Source: Octopus sinensis (lineage: Eukaryota). Taken from it: a DNA stretch of 64,000 nt. The translations under genes were made by a program, and so were the position numbers. The DNA lies in the NCBI RefSeq assembly GCF_006345805.1, contig NC_042998.1, positions 180,110,001 to 180,174,000 on the forward strand. Reading direction: 5' to 3'. Shown here one piece after another: positions 4,432 to 55,806 of the stretch (positions are counted from its first letter, which is position 1; every line of letters begins with the position of its first letter). Under the pieces are notes generated by a model. The model ran no database searches. It was not told where the DNA came from and saw only the letters and a program-made list of their open reading frames with translations.

Positions 4432-4716
4432 ATTGGTAAAACGGTAAGATAACAAAAGAAAGAAAGAAAACCTCAACATTATGTAAATAGAGGAAATTTA
4501 TCTATAAAATAATATGTTACATTACTCGATAGTCAAGATAAAACTCTGAGTTTCAGATGCCGAAGTGGAAATCCACAACACCATCTCTTCGGTTATCTGG
4601 CTATTTGAAAACGCGTTTTCAAATAGCCAGATAACCGAAGAGATGGTGTTGTGGATTCCCACTTCGGCATCTGAAACTCAGAGTTTTATCTTGACTATCG
4701 AGTAATGTAACATATT

Positions 4717-4719
<3 letters not shown>
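4432..4719 (-). mobile_element. (TA)n-associated mini-PLE-like element with a 212 bp fold-back palindrome (4508-4719)
   Basis: Palindrome centred on aaaacg|cgtttt (4613/4614), no spacer, one mismatch seen; non-palindromic relative at 12923-13098. Confidence 0.85.
4630..4690 (+). ncRNA. Type I hammerhead-ribozyme-like motif (mirror copy 4537-4597, -)
   Basis: gataa|CCGAAGA|gatg..catct|GAAA|c-tc-a-ga-g|TT|ttatc: stem I gataa/ttatc, core with U4>C, stem III ctc-a-gag, GUU triplet. Confidence 0.7.
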
Positions 4720-4759
<40 letters not shown>

Positions 4760-4790
4760 TTTATTTTAAGCAGCAGAAAATTCAACAAAT

Positions 4791-4828
4791 CTGTTACTCT
4801 GAGTTTCTCGTTGCCGTTCATCAGACAG
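4791..4828 (-). ncRNA. Minimal type I hammerhead-like motif
   Basis: Minus strand: ctgt|CTGATGA|acg-gcaa-cga|GAAA|ctc-a-gag|TA|acag; GUA triplet, stem I ctgt/acag. Confidence 0.75.
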
Positions 4829-4844
4829 TTTTTGCTAGAAAAAA

Positions 4845-4882
4845 CTGTCTGATGAACGGCAACGCGAAACTCAGAGCAACAG
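4845..4882 (+). ncRNA. Minimal type I hammerhead-like motif (U16.1>C, likely inactive)
   Basis: ctgt|CTGATGA|acg-gcaa-cgc|GAAA|ctc-a-gag|CA|acag. Confidence 0.7.
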
Positions 4883-4983
4883 ATTTTGTTGATTTCTGCT
4901 GGTTAAAATAAAGCATATTACTCTACCACTGGTATTTGAGTACTCTTTTTTCCACCTTGTTTCACATTTATGTGTTACTCCGG

Positions 4984-10875: not shown

Positions 10876-11519
10876 CGATGTCGGTCAGGATTGCAATCAC
10901 ACAACAAATGTTGTTTGGGTGATTAGGCTAAACGTACATACACTGTAACCAAAATAAACTTTATGAAAGTAATATTAAGTGTTATTCTCTGAGGATTCAA
11001 TGTAAACATTTATTTAATACAAACTTAATTCAAATTAATCTTATACAAACATTTATTGTAAATGCACTTAAATCAGCTTACAGCCTGCGAAATGCAACAA
11101 GGTCACACTTGTTTATGAGCGGAACAGCCATATTTTCTCTACCAAATGTTGAATGTAGAAATTGAAAACAAATAAATATTATTACATCAGAACTTTTTTT
11201 TATTCCTTTTCTGGTTCATCACTGGACTAGGGCGAACTTGAGGCACTCACCTTCCAGTATTCAAACGATAATATTTATCCCTGTATATATTTTAACCTGT
11301 TATTGTATTGTTTACTATTTGCCGAACGCAAAATTATAGGGCATACAAGGACAGTGCAAACAACAGTTTTTAGGCTAATGTGTGAGCATAAAGACACTCG
11401 TAATACATATTTATTTAGATACGTACATAAATCCAAATGCGCGCACTCGCGCACGCAGTTATCTCTCTTTTTATATATAAGTAAATGCATGCCATTGTAC
11501 TAGCCTGTTGTCTGTTTGT

Positions 11520-11730
11520 CTTTTATTTTTTACTTGTTTCTCTCATTAGACTGTGGTCATGCTGGGGCACCGCCTTGAAGAACATTTTAGTCGAATGAAT
11601 CTACCCCAGTACTTTTTAATCCAGGTACTTATTCTGACGGTCGCTTTTGCCGAACCGCTAAGTTATGGGGGCGTAAGCATACCAGCACTAGCTGTCAAGT
11701 GGTGGAGAGTGGGGCAAACACATACATACA
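11520..11730 (-). mobile_element. 3' half of tRNA-SINE family B
   Basis: Reverse complement of the gcggtgccccagcatg...gaaacaag tail and ttagcggttcggcaaaag body. Confidence 0.8.
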
Positions 11731-11732
11731 TA

Positions 11733-11775
<43 letters not shown>

Positions 11776-18192: not shown

Positions 18193-18532
18193 GCGTGGCA
18201 CCTTGGGCAAGTATCTTCTGCTATAGCCTCGGGCCGACCAATGCCTTGTGAGTGGATTTGGTCGATGGAAACTGAAAGAAGCCCGTCGCATATATGTATA
18301 TATATATATATTTATGTGTGCGCGTGTATGTTTGTGTGTCTGTATTTGTCCCCCTAGCATTGTTTGACAACCGATGCTGGTGTGTTTATGTCCCCGTCAC
18401 TTAGCGGTTCGGCAAAAGAGACTGATAGAATAAGTACTGGGCTTACAAAGAATAAGTCCCGGGGTCGAGTTGCTCGACTAAAGGCGGTGCTCCAGCATGG
18501 CCGCAGTCAACTGACTGAAACATGGAAAAGAG
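18193..18532 (+). mobile_element. tRNA-SINE family B (CORE-like ggcaccttgggcaag), 5'-truncated
   Basis: Matches 55278-55659; 3' tail gcggtgctccagcatggccgcagtca-ac-tgactgaaac. Confidence 0.9.
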
Positions 18533-18540
18533 TATAACAA

Positions 18541-18730
18541 ATATCCAGAATCTTTGTTCAGTACCGGATCGATTCCAAAATCTAATCGGTTCATGCCAGT
18601 CACGAGGTTAAACATCCCTCAAAGTTTCATCCGAATCCACCAAGCGGTTCTTGAGATACCGTGTCCACGGTCAAACAAACAAACAAATACGGCTGAAACA
18701 ATTCCTCCGCCTTCGCTAAGGCGGCGGTAG
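18541..18730 (+). mobile_element. 3' half of the HINE-like element
   Basis: aaagtttcatccgaatcc core, (CAAA)n tract and terminal stem-loop cctccgcc-ttcgctaa-ggcggcgg. Confidence 0.6.
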
Positions 18731-21776: not shown

Positions 21777-22022
21777 TACTATGTGTGTGTGTGTGAGTGC
21801 GGAGGGATGGATCTATGTGTTTGTCCCTCCGTCACTGTTTGCCAACCAGTGCTGGTGTGTTTATGTCCCCATAAGCTAGCGGTTCTGCAAAAGAGACCGA
21901 TAGAATAAATACTAGACTTAAGAAATAAGTCCTGGGGTCGATTTGTTCCATTAAATCCCTTCAAGACGGTGCTCCAGCATGGTCGCAGTAAAATGACTGA
22001 AACAAGAAAAAGAATAAAAGAA
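21777..22022 (+). mobile_element. 3' half of tRNA-SINE family B
   Basis: Body and cagtaaaatgactgaaac tail. Confidence 0.85.
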
Positions 22023-22929
22023 TATGTGTGTGTGTATGTATGTATGTATGTATGCAAGCATGTTTGCATGTATGTATGTATATGTGCGCACATGCGTGTG
22101 TGTGTGAGACACTTGATACCTCACTATATTCATAACACATCCGCAACAAAATTATTGCCCATGAATCGAAAGCCAATGTTTTAATGTCAAACCATCGCTC
22201 ATATTCACTAGACTATAATTCCACCCAAAAGACGTTTGTGAAATACATTACTGCTCAAAGTTATGCGCATAATAGGCTTTCATTATGAGTTTTACATTAT
22301 ACTTGAGATATTAACCAGAAATTCCATTACCTAAGTGGCGTTCACAGTATACCATGTTAGAAAACACAACCAAAATATATGTTTACATAAAATTGTGCTA
22401 ATACGCTATTTATGTTATGCATCATAAAGCATTTTTGACGTATGTAATAGTAATTATAGCCAAATAAAGTGGTGAGACCCTTAAAACAAGATATAAGCTC
22501 CCGCTATAGAAAAGCTTTTTCAATTTCTGTAAGTTTCACGTGAAATTCGCTCATGCTTCGAGAAAGTCATGAATGCCAAAAAATCCCATATTGTTCTCCT
22601 TTAAAACAAAGGACCAGTGATACTAGAATAGAAGAAAGAAAAGTTTGTGGTCTTGCAAACAAATTCAGCAAATATAGTACTTTATTTATCGATGATTTCT
22701 CTTAATTTTTTCTAATTTTGGTACAAGGCCAGCAATTTTGAGAGGTGGAGGATATCGATTCCCCAGTGATAAGGAGGATAGAAGTAGATTGCATTGACTC
22801 ATTATGTACGACAGGTACTTTCAAATCCAGGAGTGATGACGGACGAAGTTGTGCCGGGTGGTATTTGAAAACCACAGGAAAGAAATGAATTATAAAAAAT
22901 AACGATGGAAGTAAAGAAGATGATAATAA

Positions 22930-28828: not shown

Positions 28829-29016
28829 TGTATGTATGTATGTATGTATGTATATATATATATATGTATATATATATACATATACATGTATATATATACA
28901 TATATATATACATATATATATACATATATAAATATATATATATAAATACATACATATATAAATATATATATACACACATATATATATATATATATATATA
29001 CATACATATATATATC

Positions 29017-29068
<52 letters not shown>

Positions 29069-29090
29069 GAGAGAGAAGAGGCAGATAGAG
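28790..29090. repeat. (TATG)n/(TA)n/(GA)n compound microsatellite
   Basis: Direct inspection. Confidence 0.95.
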
Positions 29091-31854: not shown

Positions 31855-32090
31855 TGTATATATATTTATATACATATAAATGTGTGTGTCTATGTGCGTG
31901 TGTTATTGCCTGCATTGTCTCCCACCAGCGCTTAATGACTTTACGTCCCAGTAACTTAGCAGTTCGGCAAAACAGACAGAATAAGTACCAGAATTTAAAA
32001 AGAGATTACTTATGTTGATTCGTGCGATTAAAACACTTTAATGCTGTGCCCCAGAATGGCCGCAGACTAAAGGAAGTAACAGGTAAAAGA
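31620..32090 (+). mobile_element. tRNA-SINE family B with expanded internal (TA)n
   Basis: Head gcgcag...gctgtgtg-taagaagtttg..ccaaccacatg; degenerate tail. Confidence 0.8.
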
Positions 32091-33265
32091 TGCCATCGTA
32101 GAGATTAAGAATATTCTTTTTTTTTGGTCAAGTCAGTCTTTTGCTATTCTCAGTTTCGCCTCAGGGCACCCAATCCTAACTTGCCTGAAGGTTATGTGCA
32201 TCCACAGCCGAAACTAAGAGTAATAAGAGACTGTTTTGATCGAAATAAAAATACTACTCTCACACGCGCGTGCACACACACACACACACACACACACATG
32301 ATTGCATTATCTAATCTGCTTGTCTTTCTAAGGTGGTTAATTGAGGAAGAATTTTATTGCTTTTTCTAGCATGTTAGTTGACCATCATATAGAAGCTTCC
32401 TTGATGGCTCTCATATGTTCTTCTGTTAGAACTTTAATATCAGGACTTAGAAAGAAGACAAGACAAACGATTTACTTCTGTTTAGAATTTTTGCTGTGTA
32501 AAACACTTATTAAAAGCATAAGACAGCTGGCGACTGATAGGATAGAAAGATAAAACTGTTTGTGAATGATACCCATGAAGAGAACAGTCTGCAGAAGAAT
32601 ATGGAAATATTTTTAGAATTTGCCTTTTCACGAAACTGCAAACAAAACAAAAAAAAAGAGTAAGAAAAAAAAAATGAGTGTTGCAGAAATAAAGCATTCT
32701 TACACAAACGGAATTTTTATCCTTAAACAAACAACTGATGAAGGCGAACACCAGTCTTGATTATACAAAAACAACACATCAACCGTTTCAGCTGTGACAC
32801 ATACAAACAATCAAAGCGAATGTAGCAACCAGCCAAAAACCAACAACTTACGCACATCATAGGAAATTACGAAACCAGGAAGACACGATGAGTACCAGCT
32901 CAAAACTAGGGGCATATGAAAGCTTTAGAAATATAATATACATTCCTTAGAAACTGGGTAAACAATATTATCGGTTGTTTGACTTTTCTTTTTGTTTTTC
33001 CATTTAGCATCTAACAAAATTATGTCTATCAAGCCAAAAACAAAAGCAAGGAAGTTACCACCAGAGTTGAGAGTCGACGCCATGCTTTTCAAATGTGAGG
33101 ATATTTAAACATTGACGCACAGGCATTATGGTAGCTGATTTTATTGGATGTTACTTAAAAGCGTTTCATAAATGTCCATGTAAAGAAACAATCAACCATT
33201 GTTGATGATTGACGTATGGCGAGTTCGTTTCACAGCTCGTTCGCCTGAAATATGAAACATGACTT

Positions 33266-35792: not shown

Positions 35793-36209
35793 CTACTGGA
35801 TTAATTGTTCCACCAGTGTTCCTGCAGAAAATTTTGATATAGAATGCTTATTTGTATACGAACAATGCCATTACATTTGTGATAATAATAAAGGTGACAC
35901 GCCTAATGACCCATGCCAGGGAGTATTTTGGACTACAAATAAAATTCTCTGGACCATCTATTTATTATATATATTGTTCTTTTTCTTTTGTTTTATAATA
36001 TGTGAGTAATTAGAAAATTCATTGTTGATATTTATACGAAATAAATATTTAAGGAAGGAATACTAATGAAATGCAAGTGCTTGATATGTATGGAATTTGT
36101 CCGCCTAAGTACGCTCGGATATGAACCAATTTGATTATTTTCCGCTACTTAGATTTGTGGGAAATTTTAATATATAATAAACTCGGTCATCCTGCACTTA
36201 ATGGTTAAC

Positions 36210-36653
36210 TCTTTACTCTTTGCTCTTTTACTTGGTTCAGTCATTTGACTGCGGCCATGCTGGAGCACCGCCTTTAGTCGAGCAAATCGACCCCAGGACT
36301 TATTCTTTGTAAGCCTAGTAATTACTTATTCTATTGGTTTCTTTTGCCGAACCGCTAAGTTACGGGGACGTAAACACACCAGCATCGGTTGTCAACGAGC
36401 TGGTAGAAACGTTAGCACACCGGGCGAAATACTTACCGGTATTTCGTCTGCCGTGACATTCTGAGTTCAAATTCCGCCGAGGTCGACTTTGCCTTTCATC
36501 CTTTCGGGGTCGATAAATTAAGTACCAGTTACGCACTGGGGTCGATGTAATCGACTTAATCTCCTTGTCTGTCCTCTCTGTGTTTAGCCCCTTGTGGGTA
36601 GTAAAGAAATAGGTTGTCAAGCGATGTTGGGGGCGGGGGCAAACGCAGACACA

Positions 36654-39630: not shown

Positions 39631-39775
39631 AATTTCATGGGAGAGGTTAAGTCGATTACATTGACACTCTCTTAGGACGATATCTAATATGACAGAAGGT
39701 ATCAGGCGGCAAGCTAGTAGTATCGTTAGCACGCTGGGCAGAATGCTTACAATATTTCACCCGTCTTTACCTTCT

Positions 39776-40383
39776 TAGGACTACTGCTCCCAACTATGGT
39801 CACCACACAATATAAAATTCTCGGCGGAACTCGAAGCAATCCAACGAAGTTAAACTAAGAAAATTGTATCAATGCAACGTATCAGCTGCTGGGAAAGACT
39901 GAAAGAATTAAAACTCCTCTCTCTAGAACGAAGGCGGGAAAGATATGCAGTGATATATATCTGAAAAATCCTGGAAGGCCTTGGAGCAAACTTTGGCACT
40001 GAAATTTACTCAAACTGCAGAACGGGGCGCCACTGCATAGTGCCAAAGATCCCAGCATCGCTACAAAAATACAGGACCAGATACTGCAACAGCTTGGGTT
40101 TCAAGGGCTCACAGCTCTTCAGTATCCTTCCAAAGTGCCTGAGAGACCTGCTATAGTGTGGATGTAGGTGCCTTTAAAACACAACTGGATCTCCTCCTGT
40201 CAAGAGTTCCAGACGAGCCTACCTCGCGGCAGAAAACATATGAAGGCAGCGGCAACAAACTACCTCATTGACCAAATGCCACATAGAGGAAGTTTCAAAT
40301 AAGGGTGTAACTCAGTGTAATTCAACGGTGGTGCCCCAGTGTGACTATAACTTTGAGCTGAAACATTTTAAAGATTTAAAGAT
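39776..40383 (+). mobile_element. 3' fragment of a CR1/L2-group LINE (RT C-terminus, 3' UTR and tail)
   Basis: Translates DYCSQLWS..LEAIQR..WERLKELKLLSLERRRERY..; tail ggtggtgccccag...gagctgaaac then (tttaaaga)x2. Confidence 0.85.
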
Positions 40384-40443
40384 CTCTCTCACCCTCTCAC
40401 TCCCTCCATCCCCCCTCTCTCTCCCTATATATATATATATATA

Positions 40444-40560
40444 TACGGCCATATCACGTTGAAAGCACCGGTTCTCGTCTGATCACCGAAGTTAAGCAAC
40501 ATCGAGCCTAGTTAGTACTTAGATGGGTGACCGCTTGGGAAACCTAGGTGCTGTAAGCAT
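40444..40560 (+). pseudogene. 5S rRNA copy lacking its first ~3 nt, fused downstream to a LINE-type tail (40577-40634)
   Basis: tacggccatatcacgttgaaagcaccggttctcgtctgatcaccgaagttaagcaac...gttagtacttagatgggtgaccgcttggga...ggtgctgtaagc; box A and box C recognisable; helix ccTAG/CTAgg still pairs; single copy, not an array. Confidence 0.92.
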
Positions 40561-41758
40561 TCCCTTCATTTTAAATGGCGTTGCCCCAGCATGGCCACAG
40601 CTCAAGAGCTGAAACTGGAAAACATAAACATAAATATATATATATATCAGTGATAAAAATCCGCTCTCAAATTTACATGATTCTTGATTCTATTTTGATT
40701 TAGGATCCCTCATATTTTCGAACGCAACGGTAAGAAATTATTTGCACACAAATTTCAACTAGACTTGAAGCGCTATTCCAAGGAGTGGCTGATACTTGCG
40801 GAAATCTTCTCATTGTTAGTTCTTGATTTAGAGCATATCATGAAAAATACTTTGCATTCTTTTATTCTTACCATTGTTCGTAACAAAGCTAAACGTAGTC
40901 TATGGGCAAAACTATCTATGAATAAAGCAAGTGGATAATTTCTTTTCAACTATTGACTGCAAGCCATCCAAGTCCCAAAACTTGACAACGCCATCTCAGC
41001 AACTATTTAGCTTACACGTATATTACGCAATTTGTAACGAATGTACAAAGCTCTGTTCTGCTTCGATAGACGTTCTCAACCTCAAAAATTCGTTCACATA
41101 ACTTAGCACTCAATGCAAAACGAAGCGCATATGACATAAATTGGTACTGTCAGTGGTTTCAAAAAAGCACTACAGAAAGGAATTTTGTGTGTTTTGATCA
41201 TTTTTTTATTATTTCATCAACTGCAATGTATTGACACAGACTCTACGAGGTAGTTATATAATAAACTGGACATTCCACTGAAAGTTGTAGTATTGTCAAG
41301 GAGACATTTTAACTCGCTATCATAATTGCTTAGCACATCAATAAATTCGACGTAGTTACTGTATTTAATGAACTAGTTATTGGCCTCACCAGGACCTCTA
41401 AATACTTGCCTCTTTTAACAAAATAATATGCTATATCAAAAGAACGCTCCATGAATTTTCTGTTCCTTTTAACAATTTATGCTCATTATCTGGAACATTC
41501 CTTTGATCACTCAATCCAGACTTACCAAAGGACTTTTATTTTCTGCTAATATTACAACATGCAAGTGATTTGCTTATAGTCTGCATATTTTAATTGCTTT
41601 ATGTACATGTGACAAATCCTTATATCTGTAAGTATTCAATATAATTTTATCATTTAAATACAGAAGACATCAGCAACAATAAACTCTTAGCACACTAATA
41701 AATCCAGCAAGCCTTTCTATTGTTGATGTAAATTTTAATGGTAGTGATCAGGCAGGAA

Positions 41759-44269: not shown

Positions 44270-45397
44270 CGAGAGTGGATTGAAAATTTCATAGGTTGAC
44301 TATGAAAGAGTGATGCTAGAGTTGTGAAATTTTGCATGCATTAACTTCAATAATAACAGCATTGTATGTTTCCAAGTAAACTGACATGTTACCGTTCAAA
44401 GAAGTCTTCAAAAGTAACCAGTAGAGACTTCTCTTGAAAACGGACAAAATTTGAAATCGTTCATGCTGACATGGTTGCTATATTACGGGATGATGATTCA
44501 GGTTTTCCAACAGTGCAAAAATGGGCAGCTGAATTTAGGAGGAAAACATTTATCATATTAACACGAAGATGGATGAGAGGTTATTGACTATCAATCAAAA
44601 TAGCCAGTGTTGGGAGCATATCTCGTGAGAGAGTTGAGAATATTCTACATAATGAACTTAGCATGACGAAGGTTTCTGCTCCGTAGGTGTCACGTATTCT
44701 GGACACCTGATCAAAAGCGCATCAAATTGACCACGTCACGAGGAAAAATCTGACATTGACTGAGGCAGACCCAGCTGGTTTTCTAAAACGTTCTCTTCAC
44801 CAAAGAAGACCAAGTTTGCTTCATCTGTAGGAAAAATGACGGCCTCAGGTTTTAGGATGCAAAAAAGCATAATGTTTATTGAATATTTTCAAAAGGGCCA
44901 CACTATCAATGGAGAGTACGATGCCAACTTTCTAAGGCAGTTGCGAAAAGCTTTCAAAACCGAACGTCCAGGAAAAATGACGAAAGGGATTTTGTTTGAT
45001 AAGGACAATGTTCCTGCACACAAGTCTTTGGTTTCGATGACTGTTGTGTGTGACTCTGGCTTTGAACTGATTGATCACCGCCTCTATTCTCTTGATTTGG
45101 CCCCATCTGACTATCACCAGTTCCCCAATATGAAAAAACACTTGGCTGGGAATCAGAATAGTAGTGATGATGACGTCATATCTGCTATTGGTGACATTTT
45201 TGCGAACAGGATGAAAGCCTATTTTGGATAATAGCTTCTTTTGGCGAACAGAATGAAACAAACAGGATCCAAGCACTGCAACCCTGATGGAAGAAGTGCA
45301 TGGATCGCAAGGGAGAGTATGTTGAAAAATAAGCCTCTTTTGGTTACATTCCATGAAGGTATTTTGGTCAGAGTGCGAACATTTCAGGCGACCCTGG
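44270..45397 (+). mobile_element. Decayed mariner transposon
   Basis: ta-cgagagtggattgaaaatttc...gacc-ctgg-ta ends; translated FDKDNVPAHK...YSLDLAPSDYHQFPNMKKHL (D,D34D-type catalytic region). Confidence 0.88.
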
Positions 45398-48568: not shown

Positions 48569-51500
48569 TAGTTTTATTGTTATAGCGTGCTTTCACTTCA
48601 CTACCGAGCGCAGCTCTGTGTGCCTTGGGTATGTCCTGTGATTTGTTGTGATGCTCTGATGGTTATTGTATGGAAAGAGTTCTGCGTAGGATGTGTGCAG
48701 TGCCTAGTAGTGCAATTTTCTGTATGTTATATGTGTTTGTAAGTCCTGGTGTTTTTGTTATGTATTTGTCTGAATATTTTTTTATCATGCCTAATGCACC
48801 TACTATGATAGGAATTGTTTCTGTTTTCAGATTCCACATTCTAGTTACCTCTATTTCCAGGTCTTTGTATTTTGAGAGTTTCTCCATTTCTTTTAGAGAC
48901 ACGTTGTCATCTGCCGGTATTGATACATCAATTAGAAAGCATTTTTTTTCTTCATGATCTCTGACAACTATATCTGGTCTGTTGGCCTTAATTTCTCTAT
49001 CTGTGTGTATCGGCATATCCCAGAGTATGGTTGCTTTCTCGTTTTCTGTGACCTTTCCTGGTGTGTGCCTATACCATCTTTTTTCTGTTGTTATTCCATA
49101 ATGTTGGCATAGCTTCCAATGTATGTAGGTTCCAACTCTGTCATGTCTGTGAATATATTCCTTCTTAGCCAGGACTGGGCAGCTAGAGATAATATGATTT
49201 ATTGTTTCTTGTCCATCTCCACATATTCTGCAGTTACTTGTAATATTTCTTTTCATTACATGTTTTTGGTAATTTCTGGTGGGGAGGCTTTGGTCTTGTG
49301 CTGCAATTAAAAATCCCTCTGTTTCTGCTTTGAGTCCTGAGCTTCTCAACCATTGCTGGGATTTTTCTTTGTCTATTTCTTTTGCGTTTAGTTTAGTGCA
49401 GTATTTACCATGAAGGGGCTTTTCTTGCCATCGTTTTATCATGGTTCGTTGCTGTTCTATTTTTAGTTTGGATTTCATTTGTTTTATAGCTTTTGTTGTT
49501 TCTTCATCATCTTCTTCTTCTTCTTCGTGTTTATTAGGTGGTATGATTTCTTGTTTGTATTTGTCAGCTTCCTTAAATACTGAGAACAGTTTTTTGTTTT
49601 GCTCGTGTTTTGCTGCTATCTGGATCAGTTTTCCTTCCTTCTGAAGTAGGTATTTTTGCAGTCCTATGGTGGTTATTTTATAGTAGTTTTCCAGCTGTAT
49701 AAGCCTCTACCACCTTCTATACGTTGTATATATAGTCTTTCTATGTCAGATTTTGGGTGATGCATCCTAGATCCTGTCAGTATTTTTCTTGTTTTCCTGT
49801 CTATTTTGGACAGTTCATTTCGTGTCCAGTTAAGGATATTGTAGCTGTAACTTATAACTGGGACAGCTAAAGTGTTGATACCTATTATCTTGTTTTTAGC
49901 ATTGAGCTCTGTTTTTAATATTGATCTAACTCGTCTATAATATTCTTTTTTTATTTTCTCTTTCATTTGTGTGTGTTGTGTCTTATCTAGTTCATGGATT
50001 CCTAAGTATTTGTAAGTTTGGCTTTGGTCTAATTCTTTTATTTCATTGGTTTTATCTAGTGTGATGTTGTTACTCTTAACTAGTTTTCCTCTTTTCATGG
50101 TTACTTTGGCGCATTTTTCTAATCCAAATTTCATATCTATTTCTTTGGTAAATCCATGAACTGTCTTTAATAGTTTTCCAGCTGTTTGTCATTTGCAGCG
50201 TATAGTTTTAGGTCATCCATATATAAAAGGTGGCTGATCGTTTTGCCGTAACATCTATATCCGCATCCAGTTCTATTTAGCATATCAGATAGAGGTGACA
50301 GTGCCAAGCAGAAAAGGAGTGGAGAGAGCGTGTCTCCCTGGAATATTCCTCTTCTAATGGGGATGTCTTTGGTTTTCATGAGTCCCTCTTTTGTTTGGAG
50401 GTGTAGGACTGTTTGCCATTTATTCATGGAGTGCTCTATGAATTTTATGATTGTTGGTGCTACTTTGTAAATGGCTAGTGTTTCGAGGATCCATGTGTGG
50501 GGGATGCTATCAAACGCCTTTTTGTAGTCAATCCAGGCCATACTGAGGCCTTTCTTCTTTCTGTGGCTGTCTTTAGTTACGGCTTTATTAATCATTAGTT
50601 GATCTTTACAGCCATATGAGCCTTTGCGGCATCCTTTCTGCTCTTCTGGGAACAGTTTGTTTTCGTCCAGGTGCTTGTTCAGCCTTTGCGATATCACTGC
50701 AGTAAATGCCTTGAACATAGTAGGGAGGCAGGTTATTGGTCTGTAGTTTTCTGGTTTTGCTGTTTTATTTGATTTGGGAATTAAGATGGTTTTCCCCTTC
50801 GTGAGCCATTCAGGCATTGTCTCTGGCTCTGCTAGTATGCTGTTAAAGTTTTCAGCCAGCTTTTTGTGCATTCCTGTTAGATATTTCAACCAGAAGTTGG
50901 GGATCTTGTCATGCCCAGGTGCCTTCCAGTTGCTTAGTTTTTGCAGTGCCTGGGTGACCTCTTCAGTTGTTATGGGGGTCCAAAGTTGTTCAGATGCCGA
51001 GTTTGTTATTTTCATACTCCTTTTTTTTGGCTGTTCGTTCGCCGACCATATTTCTCTCCAGAATTCTTCCAATTCTTCTGCCGTTGGTGCTGCAGTGACT
51101 TCTATTTTATTTTTGCCCAGTTCTTGGTAGAACTTTTTGGAGTTGGTGTTGAACTTTTTGTTCTGTTCAAAGAAGCGTTGGCGTTTCTCGTACCGGCGGA
51201 TCCTTTGAGCTTTGGCAAGGATATCTTGCTTCAGCTTTTCTTTTATATCCGGCAAATCTTTTTCTGTGATGTTATATTTGCGGAGCATTTTTGTTCTCTT
51301 TTTGTTGCTCAGTAGCGTTGATTGTTTGCTGATTTCATTAAGAATCGACAGGTCTTTTCTAATTTTTTTATTTTGTTTTGGATGTTATTATCCACAGGGT
51401 TTGTTTGGGTGGTGGTACTCCTGTTTGGGCGGGTTTGGGTGAGTATCCAGCTTCTTTTGTGGCTGCAGTGGCTGCTGCGTATATCAAGTCATTTAGCTCA

Positions 51501-52560
51501 GTGTTATCACTTTTTTTTGTTTCAGTGGCTAGTTCAGTGACGGCTAGGTTTATGCTGTTTATAATTGGTGTTGTTATTTCGTTTATTTTGATTCTTGGGA
51601 GGTATGGTCGGTGGTCCATTTTGGGCTCTGTGGTTTTCAGTTCTTTGATTATTATTTTTTTATTATCATAATCATTAGGCTCCCCTTCGTTGTTTACATC
51701 GTGTTTGTTGGGAATGTTGCGTTTGTCTTCGTGTCTTACAGTTTCAGTGTTTATATTATTGGGCATTGTTGTGTGGCTTCTATCTACATTTTCCTGGTGT
51801 ATTTTTTCTTTTAAATGTTCTATTTCTATTTCTGATATTTTTTTGGCTTTGAGAATGTATCTTCGTACGTTAGCTAATTTATTAGGGTTCATTGCTGTAT
51901 CCAAGTCTAAATCTCTATTATTTTCCTTCCATATTTTATATGTATGTGTTGTTGTATTTTCATTTTGTGGGTAGAGCATTGCTGTGAAGTATGCGTGTAA
52001 GATAGAAATGTATTCCTCACGTGTCCATTTACGTCTTTTGGGTTTTATTTGCGGGACATGAGGTACAACGTCCGGCCCATTATTTTGACGGTCGTCATTT
52101 TCGTAGGGTAACGGTCCGTTTATTTCTGTTGTCACATTATTTCGCACGAGTAGTTTTTCGTACATTTTTTGTTGTAAGTTTAATGTACGTACCGTTCGAT
52201 TGTTATTCTTGGGTTGAATAGTATCGGTGGCATTTAATTTCTTCGTAGTTCCTTTGTACATGGTGTTTGAGGTCGGGGATGATCGTGATGTTCCACGCAT
52301 GTTTACATGTGTTGTGTTAGAGGTGGAGATAATATCGAGTCAAAATACATCATTTCGTTTCGAAAATAGTAATAAATTTCAATTAGTATTACTTACTCGG
52401 ATACAGTCCAATTCTTTGTTAGTAAATCTTTGGCTCCATAGGATGTCCTTGTTTTCGATGTTTGTGGATAGATTTCGGAGCTCTGTATTTTCCTTCTTAC
52501 ATCTTAAACGTCCCCGGTGTTCTCCTACGTCCCCGGTGTTCTCCTCACGTCCCCGGTGTT
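48566..52560 (-). mobile_element. Apparently full-length R4/Dong-clade non-LTR retrotransposon inserted in (TAA)n
   Basis: Single long RT-endonuclease coding region, short UTRs, (TAA)n on both sides (48539-48565, 52561-52776); Dong-type elements are known to target TAA repeats. Confidence 0.93.
48663..52300 (-). pseudogene. R4/Dong polyprotein (~1210 aa reconstructed): N-terminal domain, reverse transcriptase, CCHC knuckle and restriction-like (PD..D/E) endonuclease; 3 frameshift regions
   Basis: NWKAPGHD, NYRPITCL, AWIDYKKAFDS, GIFQGDTLSPLLF, LYMDDLKLY, KFGLEKC, GGRGL, CRICG..ETINHIISSC, HRHDRV, RPDIV..LIDVSIP, KLSKYKDL; track ORFs 51368-52300, 50167-51288, 49673-50134, 48663-49478. Confidence 0.93.
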
Positions 52561-55199: not shown

Positions 55200-55806
55200 T
55201 ACGAGGTGGTGCTGGAAAGTTACTGGTTTTAGGGTAAAACAGAATACAGGTGAATCAACTAATTATGATTTTATTTAGGCGCAGGAGTGGCTGTGTGGTA
55301 AGAAGCTTGATTACCAACCACATGGTTCCGGGTTCAGTCCCACTGCGTGGCACCTTGGGCATGTGTCTTCTACTATAGCCTCTGGCCGACTAAAGCCTTG
55401 TGAGTGGACTTGGTGGACGGAAACTGAAAAGAATCCCGTCGTATATATGTATGTGTGTGTGTGTGTGTATGTTTGTTTGTGTGTGTGTTTGTCCCCCCAA
55501 CAGCGCTTGACAATCGATGCTGGTATGTTTACGATAGAATAAGTACTAGGCTGACAAAGAATAAGTCCTGGGGTCGATTTGCTCGACTAAAGTCCTGGGG
55601 TCGATTTGCTCCAGCATGGCCGCAGTCAAATGACTGAAACAAGTATAAGAATAAAAGAGTAATACATTCCCCTCTCGGATTCACACACACTTATTGCAAC
55701 GTTCCTCTAGTTTTTCTAAACTCTGTAAAAGAACTCGGAAGGTTGTGCCTCCAGCCAGCCCTTTCATGAAATTCTTATAGCCCGGAACTTTTCAGCACCT
55801 CATCGA
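55200..55806 (-). mobile_element. Mariner MITE (same family as 26218) interrupted by a full-length SINE B (+, 55278-55659)
   Basis: TIR tacgaggtggtgctggaaag at 55200 and ggaacttttcagcacctc at ~55800; MITE body resumes after the SINE. Confidence 0.75.

What the first reader, a model, noticed from the sequence alone, without database searches (positions are those of the whole stretch)
40444..40634. 5S rRNA head fused to a CR1-type 3' stem-loop tail: candidate 5S-derived SINE (SINE3-like) or 5S-LINE chimera
Seen: an almost complete 5S sequence (first ~3 nt lost into a (TA)n tract, internal promoter boxes A and C kept), a 16 nt linker, then ggcgttgccccagcatggccaCAGCTCaaGAGCTGaaac and a short (aacata) repeat. 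The same tail ends the CR1-like LINE fragment just upstream (40325-40383, ...gccccag...gagctgaaac) and, in variant form, every SINE B copy. Established: SINEs borrow a partner LINE's 3' tail, and 5S-headed SINE3 elements with CR1/L2-type tails exist in other animals. Inference: a ~190 bp 5S-promoter SINE, or a one-off template-switch chimera, mobilised by the local CR1. I am not aware of one described from octopods. Caveat: a T4 run at 40569-40572 could stop Pol III before the tail.
Basis: partly seen in the sequence, partly recalled or inferred. Interest (0 to 1): 0.8.

Follow-up and report, generated by a model that had tools for sequence, protein, structure and literature searches.

The report
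5S rRNA copy fused to LINE tail
A roughly 190-base retrocopy of 5S ribosomal RNA, joined to the 3' recognition tail of a local CR1-like LINE, sits as one block inside a (TA)n microsatellite; it is an ordinary kind of element (a 5S-headed SINE copy or a template-switch chimera), and the genome-wide count that would decide between the two could not be run here.

Summary
Window 40441-40559 (+) is a full-length 5S rRNA match (Rfam RF00001, 103.5 bits against a threshold of 38). Its first 3 nt are replaced by a (TA)10 tract.

About 17 nt downstream begins a 3' module: a GGCGKTGCNCCAGCATGGCC box hairpin, a second hairpin, CTGAAAC and (AAACAT)n. This is the genuine 3' end of a CR1-like LINE clade. 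It ends the truncated LINE 60 bp upstream, three related LINE copies in marine metagenome contigs, and all six 'SINE B' copies in the window. The second hairpin covaries.

Only the whole 5S+tail unit is flanked by a direct repeat (14 nt of AT). Neither part alone has one, so it entered as a single block.

SINE family or non-propagating chimera is unresolved. No collection available here holds cephalopod DNA, so the junction count could not be done, and the window has only one copy.

Two published octopus repeat annotations already list a 'SINE/5S' class. I favour a decayed copy of a 5S-headed, CR1-tailed SINE (about 0.55) over a chimera (about 0.35). Either way it is a known kind of element. 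Interest is modest.

The parts
39690..40383 (+). A 5'-truncated, decayed CR1-like LINE fragment. It holds the ORF2 C-terminal remnant, the 3' UTR, the tail GGTGGTGCCCCAG...GAGCTGAAAC at 40327-40364, and (TTTAAAGA)2 at 40367-40383. It is a neighbour of the 5S element, not part of it, and a likely relative of the tail donor.
   Evidence: Frame translation shows several stops. There are 41 protein homologues, the best at 63% identity. The tail pattern was found and the terminal repeat by TRF.
40426..40445 (.). (TA)10, the 5' flank. It is one half of the split microsatellite and a candidate target-site duplication.
   Evidence: TRF. It shares a 14-nt direct repeat with the 3' flank.
40446..40561 (+). 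5S rRNA-derived head, corresponding to native positions about 4-6 to 120/121. By positional correspondence, box A is about 40490-40504 (AGTTAAGCAACATCG), the intermediate element about 40507-40512 (CCTAGT) and box C about 40520-40537 (TAGATGGGTGACCGCTTG).
   Evidence: Rfam RF00001, 103.5 bits, aligned at 40441-40559. Box positions come from 1:1 numbering against the Xenopus 5S internal control region (boxes at +50-64, +67-72 and +80-97), which I recalled from memory.
40562..40576 (+). Spacer. CCCTT(C) is of unassigned origin. From about 40566-40573 onward (CATTTTAAAT) the sequence already aligns to the region just upstream of the tail in LINE and SINE B copies. It contains a T4 run at 40569-40572, a potential Pol III terminator.
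   Evidence: Sequence and local alignments.
40576..40597 (+). Tail hairpin 1. This is the conserved box (U)GGCGUUGCCCCAGCAUGGCCA, the equivalent of GGCGGTGCTCCAGCATGGCC in the LINEs and SINE B.
   Evidence: Alignment A1. The same fold is predicted in the 5S element, SINE B and L001.
40598..40611 (+). Tail hairpin 2, CAGCU-CAAG-AGCUG. Its stem covaries among lineages: CAGCC/GGCTG, CAGTC/GACTG and CAGCT/AGCTG.
   Evidence: 87% of cells are paired, two pairs switch CG<->UA, and 0 of 500 shuffles reach the observed covariation score. Folds.
40612..40633 (+). The conserved AAAC that completes CTGAAAC, then TGG, then a short tandem repeat (A)AAACAT x about 3. This is the 3' end of the element.
   Evidence: TRF. 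LINE tails in L001, L002 and L007 have matching (AAAACATT)n, (AAAAGAAT)n and (TTAAAGAA)n ends.
40634..40647 (.). (AT)7, the 3' flank. It is the other half of the split microsatellite and a candidate target-site duplication.

Best explanation
The element at 40446-40633 is a decayed, slightly 5'-truncated copy of a simple 5S-headed SINE (SINE3 type). It consists of a whole 5S rRNA sequence, which carries the internal Pol III promoter, joined after a few nucleotides to the last 50 nt or so of a CR1-like LINE 3' UTR.

Proposed mechanism:
- A master copy is transcribed by Pol III from box A, the intermediate element and box C, and transcription reads on into the tail.
- The tail consists of two hairpins, CTGAAAC and a short tandem repeat. 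The reverse transcriptase of the CR1-like LINE recognises it in trans, as it does for the abundant SINE B that carries the same tail.
- Target-primed reverse transcription starts at a nick in a (TA)n microsatellite.
- The 5' end is joined at the UA of 5S positions 4-5, by microhomology with the TA array.

This particular copy is probably dead. It lacks the first 3 nt, has transitions in the intermediate element and box C, and has a T4 run before the tail.

Shown here: the 5S identity, the LINE identity of the tail, the conserved and covarying hairpin, and integration as a single block into a TA array. Inferred: Pol III transcription, mobilisation in trans, and membership of a multi-copy family.
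For: 1. The head is a full-length 5S match (103.5 bits).
2. The tail is the 3' end of a LINE clade. The box, hairpin, CTGAAAC and short-repeat architecture recurs in the adjacent LINE fragment, in LINE-bearing contigs L001, L002 and L007, and, more distantly, in L009 and L010. It also ends all six SINE B copies.
3. Hairpin 2 is kept through compensatory changes, as expected for a reverse-transcriptase recognition element.
4. Only the whole unit has a flanking direct repeat, 14 nt long. 5S alone or the tail alone has at most 4 nt. Random spans of the same length reach 14 nt in 0.36% of trials.
5. Literature. An Octopus vulgaris annotation lists SINE '5S' at 9.83 Mb in 4 families, and CR1 at 62 Mb with 787 recently active insertions (PMC13282606). 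That density predicts about one 200-bp copy per 64 kb, which is what the window shows. SINE/5S is also listed for O. bimaculoides and O. vulgaris in PMC8967140, Table S2. About 24,000 5S-derived loci are reported in the giant squid (PMC6962438).
6. Inference. If the window is an arbitrary 1/44,000 of a 2.8-Gb genome, meeting a truly rare chimera in it would be improbable.
Against: - There is only one copy in 64 kb, with no second 5S hit even at E <= 5. No second junction was seen anywhere, so the defining criterion of at least 100 copies is untested.
- The T4 run at 40569-40572 lies between head and tail. If the master copy had it, Pol III would stop before the tail.
- The 5S part runs exactly to its native 3' end with almost no body. 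That is also what a fresh template-switch chimera looks like.
- The published '5S' class is a pipeline label. Its 'recently active' entry is 7 insertions covering 42 kb, which looks more like 5S rDNA arrays than SINEs.
- I could not verify that the window comes from an octopus.
Confidence: 0.55

Rival explanations
1. A template-switch chimeric retropseudogene, either one-off or one of many independent events, that is not a self-propagating SINE. The LINE reverse transcriptase initiated on the 3' tail of a LINE or SINE B RNA, copied about 50-55 nt, jumped to the 3' end of a mature 5S rRNA and copied it almost to its 5' end. The hybrid cDNA then integrated into a (TA)n site.
For: - The junction lies at the native 3' end of 5S, and the head is the whole 5S.
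- Only a few unassigned nucleotides separate it from sequence that aligns to LINE and SINE B 3' ends.
- The unit entered as a single block.
- The T4 run between head and tail is harmless under this model.
- There is a single copy in the window.
- Template switching of LINE reverse transcriptase to small RNAs, including 5S, is the accepted origin of such chimeras and of 5S heads (Buzdin 2003 and Nishihara 2006, as cited in PMC4824008 and PMC4758252).
Against: Rare events are unlikely to appear in an arbitrary 64-kb window. Published octopus annotations list multi-copy SINE/5S families at a density that matches one copy per window. This model also describes how a SINE3 is born, so it is not exclusive of the best explanation. 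It differs only in whether the product went on to amplify.
Confidence: 0.35
2. Chance adjacency of two independent insertions: a 5S pseudogene or orphon, and a heavily 5'-truncated LINE or SINE B tail fragment about 55-70 bp long that landed right behind it.
For: Short 5'-truncated tail fragments are common products of LINE-type retrotransposition (general knowledge). TA-rich microsatellites are frequent here, at 2% of the window, and may be preferred targets.
Against: - There is no direct repeat around the tail alone or around the 5S alone (at most 4 nt), while the outer flanks share 14 nt.
- No TA tract lies between the two parts.
- A bare 5S cDNA has no way to be primed by a tail-specific LINE reverse transcriptase.
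- The boundary falls exactly at the RNA's 3' end.
Confidence: 0.05
3. A functional, dispersed 5S rRNA gene, or a remnant of a 5S rDNA array.
For: The covariance-model score is high (103.5 bits) and most helices are intact.
Against: - The first 3 nt are replaced by TA repeat and two helix I pairs are broken.
- It is a single copy with no tandem unit.
- There is no T-run terminator directly at the 3' end. The first T4 lies 8 nt downstream of the 5S end.
- It is embedded between a LINE tail and a microsatellite.
Confidence: 0.03

Closest known systems
SINE3 of zebrafish (Kapitonov & Jurka 2003), the founding 5S rRNA-derived SINE class
   Same: A 5S rRNA-derived head carrying the internal Pol III promoter, and a 3' terminal region shared with CR1-like LINEs. 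This is from my own knowledge and from citations in PMC10886601 and PMC10946416.
   Different: SINE3 has a sizeable body between head and tail and is a demonstrated multi-copy family. Here only about 17 nt separate head and tail, and copy number is unknown. [quoted passage not shown]
HaSE3 of Helicoverpa armigera (PMC3272025)
   Same: A 5S head grafted onto the 3' part of a co-resident tRNA-type SINE that itself shares its tail with a LINE. It is interpreted as a 5S/SINE recombinant. Here the 5S element shares its tail with the abundant SINE B and with the LINE.
   Different: HaSE3 shares the body plus the tail with HaSE1, and its partner is an RTE LINE. Here only the last 50 nt or so are shared, and the partner is a CR1-like LINE with a hairpin plus a short-repeat tail.
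Chimeric retrogenes made by LINE reverse-transcriptase template switching (Buzdin et al. 2002/2003: U6-, 5S- and 7SL-L1 chimeras)
   Same: A full-length small RNA at the 5' side, fused at its 3' end to the 3' part of a LINE or SINE transcript, with the whole flanked by one target-site duplication.
   Different: The mammalian cases use L1 with poly(A) tails and are low-copy and non-propagating. Here the donor is a tail-specific CR1-like LINE. The product carries a Pol III promoter next to a complete recognition tail, so it would be competent to become a SINE.
The 'SINE/5S' classes in published octopus repeat annotations (PMC13282606, Supplementary Table 1; PMC8967140, Table S2)
   Same: Multi-copy repeats with a 5S-like head in Octopus vulgaris and O. 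bimaculoides. Their genome density is compatible with one copy per 64 kb.
   Different: These are pipeline labels only. Part of that class may be 5S rDNA.
UnaSINE1/UnaL2 of eel (Kajikawa & Okada 2002), the stringent-type tail recognition model
   Same: A SINE and a LINE share a conserved 3' stem-loop followed by short tandem repeats, which the LINE reverse transcriptase needs in order to initiate.
   Different: The eel SINE has a tRNA head. The function of the tail was shown experimentally there. Here it is inferred from conservation and covariation only.

Membership tests
5S rRNA-derived SINE (SINE3; SINEBase definition, PMC3531059) | A head at least 60% identical to 5S rRNA over at least 60 nt | tested here: met
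   Rfam RF00001, 103.5 bits, model positions 1-120, at 40441-40559.
5S rRNA-derived SINE (SINE3; SINEBase definition, PMC3531059) | Extra non-5S sequence (body or tail) that distinguishes it from a plain 5S pseudogene | tested here: met
   A spacer plus a LINE-derived 3' module and a short tandem repeat at 40562-40633.
5S rRNA-derived SINE (SINE3; SINEBase definition, PMC3531059) | A 3' tail shared with a partner LINE | tested here: met
   The same box, hairpin and CTGAAAC in the adjacent LINE fragment and in LINE contigs L001, L002 and L007. The hairpin covaries.
5S rRNA-derived SINE (SINE3; SINEBase definition, PMC3531059) | [quoted passage not shown] | not testable with these tools
   There is one copy in the window. 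Junction scans of the metagenome, prokaryote-genome and viral collections found 0 hits, but the tail-only control found only bacterial chance hits, so these collections hold no cephalopod DNA. The protein collection lacks the host genome. The literature lists SINE/5S in octopus, but identity with this element is untested.
5S rRNA-derived SINE (SINE3; SINEBase definition, PMC3531059) | The Pol III transcript includes the tail, with no internal terminator between head and tail | tested here: inconclusive
   This copy has TTTT at 40569-40572. The homologous positions in LINE and SINE B copies lack a T4, so it may be a copy-specific mutation. No consensus is available.
5S rRNA-derived SINE (SINE3; SINEBase definition, PMC3531059) | Inserted as one unit with a target-site duplication | tested here: met
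   A 14-nt AT direct repeat flanks the whole unit only. Caveat: a split microsatellite would give the same picture without a true duplication.
Template-switch chimeric retrogene (Buzdin type) | A complete small RNA fused at its native 3' end to the 3' portion of a LINE or SINE transcript, with a single flanking repeat | tested here: met
Template-switch chimeric retrogene (Buzdin type) | A unique or independently arisen locus: the junction is not shared by a family of copies | not testable with these tools
   The host genome is unavailable.
DeuSINE / AmnSINE1-type 5S SINE | A 5S head followed by a tRNA-related segment and a Deu central domain | tested here: not met
   Only 17 nt lie between the 5S end and the tail. 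There is no tRNA signal.
Functional 5S rRNA gene | An intact 5' end and helix I, a terminator directly after the 3' end, and usually a tandem array | tested here: not met
   The 5' 3 nt are replaced and two helix I pairs are non-canonical. It is a single copy. There is no adjacent T-run.
CR1 clade (partner LINE) | Reverse transcriptase and endonuclease phylogeny placing the LINE in CR1, plus a 3' hairpin followed by short tandem repeats | tested here: inconclusive
   The tail architecture fits: a hairpin plus 6-8-bp repeats. The C-terminal motif LSLERRRERYAVIYIWKILEG resembles the CR1 motif LSLEKRRLRGDLI..Y, which I recalled from memory.

The most novel reading that the evidence does not exclude
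This is a copy of a so far uncharacterised, octopod-specific simple SINE3: a whole 5S head placed directly on the recognition tail of the CR1-like LINE that also drives the dominant octopus SINEs. That would make it the first 5S-headed SINE described structurally in a mollusc, and an independent birth of the class by template switching, caught in its minimal head-plus-tail form.
Probability: 0.5. Interest if true: 0.4.

Novelty: new member of a known kind. Interest (0 to 1): 0.3.

Why it matters
If it is a family, it adds a lophotrochozoan example to the short list of independently born 5S-headed SINEs. A 2024 review lists these only in fish, reptiles, mammals and insects. It would be the minimal form, a head plus a LINE tail with almost no body, which illustrates how template switching can create a new SINE in one step.

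It also defines the recognition tail (two hairpins, CTGAAAC and a short repeat) that the CR1-like LINE, the abundant octopus SINE B and the 5S element all share. That is useful for curating the very large 'unclassified SINE' fraction of octopus genomes.

It does not change any concept. The class, the mechanism and even the presence of a SINE/5S label in octopus annotations are already in the literature.

Tried and rejected
1. Junction count in public DNA. The pattern AGTACTTRGATGGG-N45-75-CCAGCATGGYC gave 0 hits in JGI metagenomes, GTDB genomes and IMG/VR. The tail-only control gave only bacterial chance matches or nothing. The negatives therefore say nothing about the host genome.

2. 'Protein trick'. 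I searched a six-frame translation of 40503-40634 against 5.8 billion predicted proteins, hoping for spurious ORFs called over other copies. There were 67 candidates, and none scored E <= 10.

3. Reaching host DNA through LINE proteins. The decayed CR1-like fragment finds at best 63% identity, in unnamed short ENA or TARA contigs. The young reverse-transcriptase LINE at 50167-51288 finds at best 52%. The host genome is therefore not in the collection. These contigs did give LINE tails (L001, L002, L007, L009, L010) but no 5S.

4. Thermodynamic folding of the 5S part and of the whole element. Neither is more stable than shuffles (z = 0.29 and 0.08). This is uninformative, because 5S is recognised by the covariance model and not by minimum free energy.

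5. Divergence of the head from the species' own 5S rRNA. No cephalopod 5S sequence was obtainable (PMC326244 is not held). I therefore make no age estimate, and I make no claim that the helix IV/V differences are compensatory rather than native.

6. Assigning the tail donor. Local alignment scores are similar for SINE B (72) and the LINE tails (67-70). The GAGCTG half-stem and TGCCCCAG are shared with the adjacent LINE fragment, so the donor could be either.

7. tRNA origin of SINE B. ARAGORN and Rfam found no tRNA. This was left open.

8. The Albertin 2015 octopus genome paper is not held.

Full report
**What is there**

Window 40441-40559 (+) matches Rfam 5S_rRNA over the whole model. The score is 103.5 bits against a gathering score of 38, with E = 1.4e-21. 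It is the only 5S match in the 64 kb, even at E <= 5.

Numbering runs 1:1 with a 120-nt eukaryotic 5S, so native position n falls at 40440+n. The native first three bases are replaced by the end of a (TA)10 array at 40426-40445. That accounts for two of the four non-canonical pairs in the alignment.

By position, box A is AGTTAAGCAACATCG (40490-40504), the intermediate element is CCTAGT (40507-40512), and box C is TAGATGGGTGACCGCTTG (40520-40537). Compared with the Xenopus control region, which I recalled from memory, the intermediate element and box C carry G>A and C>T transitions. The promoter is therefore recognisable but probably weakened in this copy.

The 5S ends at about 40560-40561 (...GCTGTAAGCAT[T]). 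Then comes TTCCCTTCATTTTAAAT, with a T4 run at 40569-40572. Next is GGCGTTGCCCCAGCATGGCCACAGCTCAAGAGCTGAAAC (40577-40615), then TGG and an (A)AAACAT repeat (TRF 40620-40638), and finally (AT)7 at 40634-40647.

**The tail is a genuine LINE 3' end**

Upstream, 39690-40383 is a 5'-truncated, stop-ridden remnant of a LINE ORF2 C-terminus and 3' UTR. It ends ...GGTGGTGCCCCAGTGTGACTATAACTTTGAGCTGAAAC followed by (TTTAAAGA)2.

A protein search with the remnant found 41 unnamed homologues, the best at 63% identity, all on short marine or host-associated metagenome contigs. The contigs of the three closest show the LINE's 3' end:
- L001: GGTGGTGCACCAGCATGGCCACAGCCaactcGGCTGAAAC + (AAAACATT)n
- L002: GGCGGTGCTCCAGCATGGCCTCAGCCactGGCTGAAAC + (AAAAGAAT)n
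- L007: GGTGGTGCTCCAGCATGACCACAGCCatatGGCTGAAAC + (TTAAAGAA)n

More distant relatives at 45% identity (L009, L010) keep the same architecture with different letters.

In the window, the core TGCYCCAGCATGGCC occurs 7 times with up to 2 mismatches, against 0.02 expected. The other six sites all end copies of 'SINE B', as ...GGCGGTGCTCCAGCATGGCCGCAGTCaaatGACTGAAAC + (AAAAGAGT)-like repeats.

RNA folding gives the same two adjacent hairpins in the 5S element, SINE B and L001. On the 11-sequence alignment A1, hairpin 2 is paired in 87% of cells. Two of its pairs switch between C-G and U-A. None of 500 shuffles reaches the observed covariation score, and sliding the partner by 1-3 columns drops pairing to 7-31%.

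The clade name CR1 fits the hairpin-plus-short-repeat end and, from memory, the C-terminal motif. It was not shown phylogenetically, because the fragment has no reverse-transcriptase domain.

Local alignments place the start of LINE/SINE B homology at about 40566-40573. Only about 4-10 nt of the 'linker' are therefore unassigned.

**One insertion, not two**

The 25 nt before 40446 and the 25 nt after 40633 share a 14-nt direct repeat, ATATATATATATAT. The flanks of the 5S alone, or of the tail alone, share at most 4 nt. Random 188-bp spans in this window reach 14 nt in 0.36% of trials. (TA)>=6 arrays make up 2% of the window.

Whether this is a true target-site duplication or a split microsatellite, the 5S and the tail entered a (TA)n tract as one block. 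That argues against chance adjacency, and against an independent tail insertion with its own duplication.

**SINE family or chimera?**

This is the crux, and it could not be settled. The window has a single copy.

No collection I could search holds cephalopod DNA:
- The junction pattern found nothing in the JGI metagenomes, the prokaryote genomes or IMG/VR.
- The tail-only control found only bacterial chance matches.
- A six-frame 'protein' query over the junction found nothing.
- Even a young LINE in the window has no relative above 52% identity.

The evidence is therefore indirect.

The literature favours a family:
- The curated Octopus vulgaris annotation lists SINE '5S' at 9,831,953 bp in 4 families, and CR1 LINEs at 62 Mb with 787 recently active insertions (PMC13282606). 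That is 0.35% of 2.8 Gb, or about 225 bp per 64 kb, which amounts to one copy like the one seen.
- An independent RepeatModeler-based study lists SINE/5S at 0.03-0.04% of repeat copies in O. bimaculoides and O. vulgaris, and more in the giant squid (PMC8967140, Table S2).
- The giant squid genome paper mentions about 24,000 5S-derived loci, 'likely SINEs' (PMC6962438).
- An arbitrary 64-kb window is about 1/44,000 of such a genome, so finding a truly rare chimera in it would be improbable. This is inference, and it assumes the window was not chosen for this feature.

Other points argue against, or for caution:
- The pipeline label may include 5S rDNA. Its 'recently active' entry is 7 insertions covering 42 kb.
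- I could not check that those families carry this tail.
- The host species is unverified.
- The T4 before the tail would stop Pol III if the master copy had it.
- A complete 5S abutting a short LINE tail is exactly what a fresh template-switch product looks like.

Template switching of LINE reverse transcriptase from a LINE or SINE RNA to 5S rRNA is also the accepted origin of 5S heads (as cited in PMC4824008 and PMC4758252). The two readings therefore differ only in whether the product went on to amplify.

My estimates are: SINE family copy 0.55; non-propagating chimera, one-off or recurrent, 0.35; independent adjacency 0.05; functional 5S gene 0.03.

**Comparison with what is known**

It works like SINE3 of zebrafish (5S head, CR1-like tail). 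It most closely parallels HaSE3 of Helicoverpa, a 5S head grafted onto the 3' part of a co-resident tRNA SINE that shares a LINE tail (PMC3272025). It differs in having virtually no body and in its host phylum. [quoted passage not shown]

Against the SINEBase definition (PMC3531059):
- the head, extra-sequence, shared-tail and single-unit criteria are met;
- the criterion of at least 100 copies is untestable here;
- the 'no internal terminator' criterion is inconclusive for this copy.

It is not a DeuSINE/AmnSINE1-type element, since it has no tRNA or Deu segment. It is not a functional 5S gene.

**Verdict**

The element is an ordinary kind of retroelement. At best it is the first structurally described 5S-headed SINE of a mollusc, and octopus repeat annotations already list that class by name. 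Interest is 0.3.

Noticed in passing
window 4496-4731 and 4778-4895: Two back-to-back long palindromes sit between (TA)n arrays: 2 x 118 nt at 97% complementarity and 2 x 59 nt at 88%, each with no spacer. The centre of the first scores above threshold for Rfam mir-9 on both strands (61.3 bits against 58.6). Its arm TCTTCGGTTATCTGGCTATTTGA resembles mature miR-9 in about 19 of 23 positions (miR-9 recalled from memory). The second gives sub-threshold mir-980 and mir-745 hits. It could be a foldback element, an assembly artefact, or a miR-9-derived hairpin repeat.
   Followed up: partly
window 11500-11760 (-), 18330-18560 (+), 21850-22040 (+), 31900-32120 (+), 36200-36420 (-), 55450-55680 (+): Six copies of 'SINE B', with the core ...ttgacaaccgatgctggtgtgtttacgtccccgtaacttagcggttcggcaaaagagaccgatagaataagtactaggcttacaaagaataagtcctggggtcgatttgctcgactaaaggcgg followed by the tail. 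Several are directly preceded by a TG/TA microsatellite, and that in turn by a CORE-like SINE (...ccttgggcaagtgtcttc...gaaactgaaagaagcccgtcg). This suggests a compound element. ARAGORN and Rfam detect no tRNA in any of them.
   Followed up: partly
window 48663-52300 (-): A LINE with long open frames of 310, 373, 153 and 271 aa, including a reverse transcriptase (PF00078 in its homologues). It looks young, yet its best relatives among 5.8 billion proteins are only 52% identical.
   Followed up: partly
L001 1221-1279, L002 742-796, L007 559-707, window 40327-40383 and 40577-40647: Each lineage of this LINE/SINE tail has its own terminal short repeat: AAAACATT, AAAAGAAT, TTAAAGAA, TTTAAAGA or AAACAT. 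Several copies run straight into AT-rich microsatellite, or the contig ends there. This hints at a preference for microsatellite targets.
   Followed up: no
L009 990-1092 and L010 890-1000 (TARA and ENA metagenome contigs): More distant LINE relatives (45% amino-acid identity) keep a homologous 3' end, GGCGGTGGATCACCATGGCCRTGGACaagaGTCTTCAAC plus 8-9-bp repeats. The tail architecture is therefore old and widespread in marine animals.
   Followed up: no
window 44836-45231 (+): A 131-aa ORF that resembles the C-terminal part of a mariner/Tc1-type transposase (...DKDNVPAHKS...DLAPSDYHQFPNMKKHLAG...). This is judged by eye.
   Followed up: no
window 40384-40425: A 42-bp CT-rich, low-complexity tract lies between the LINE's end and the (TA)10. 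A similar tract plus TA array occurs in reverse at 28995-29073.
   Followed up: no
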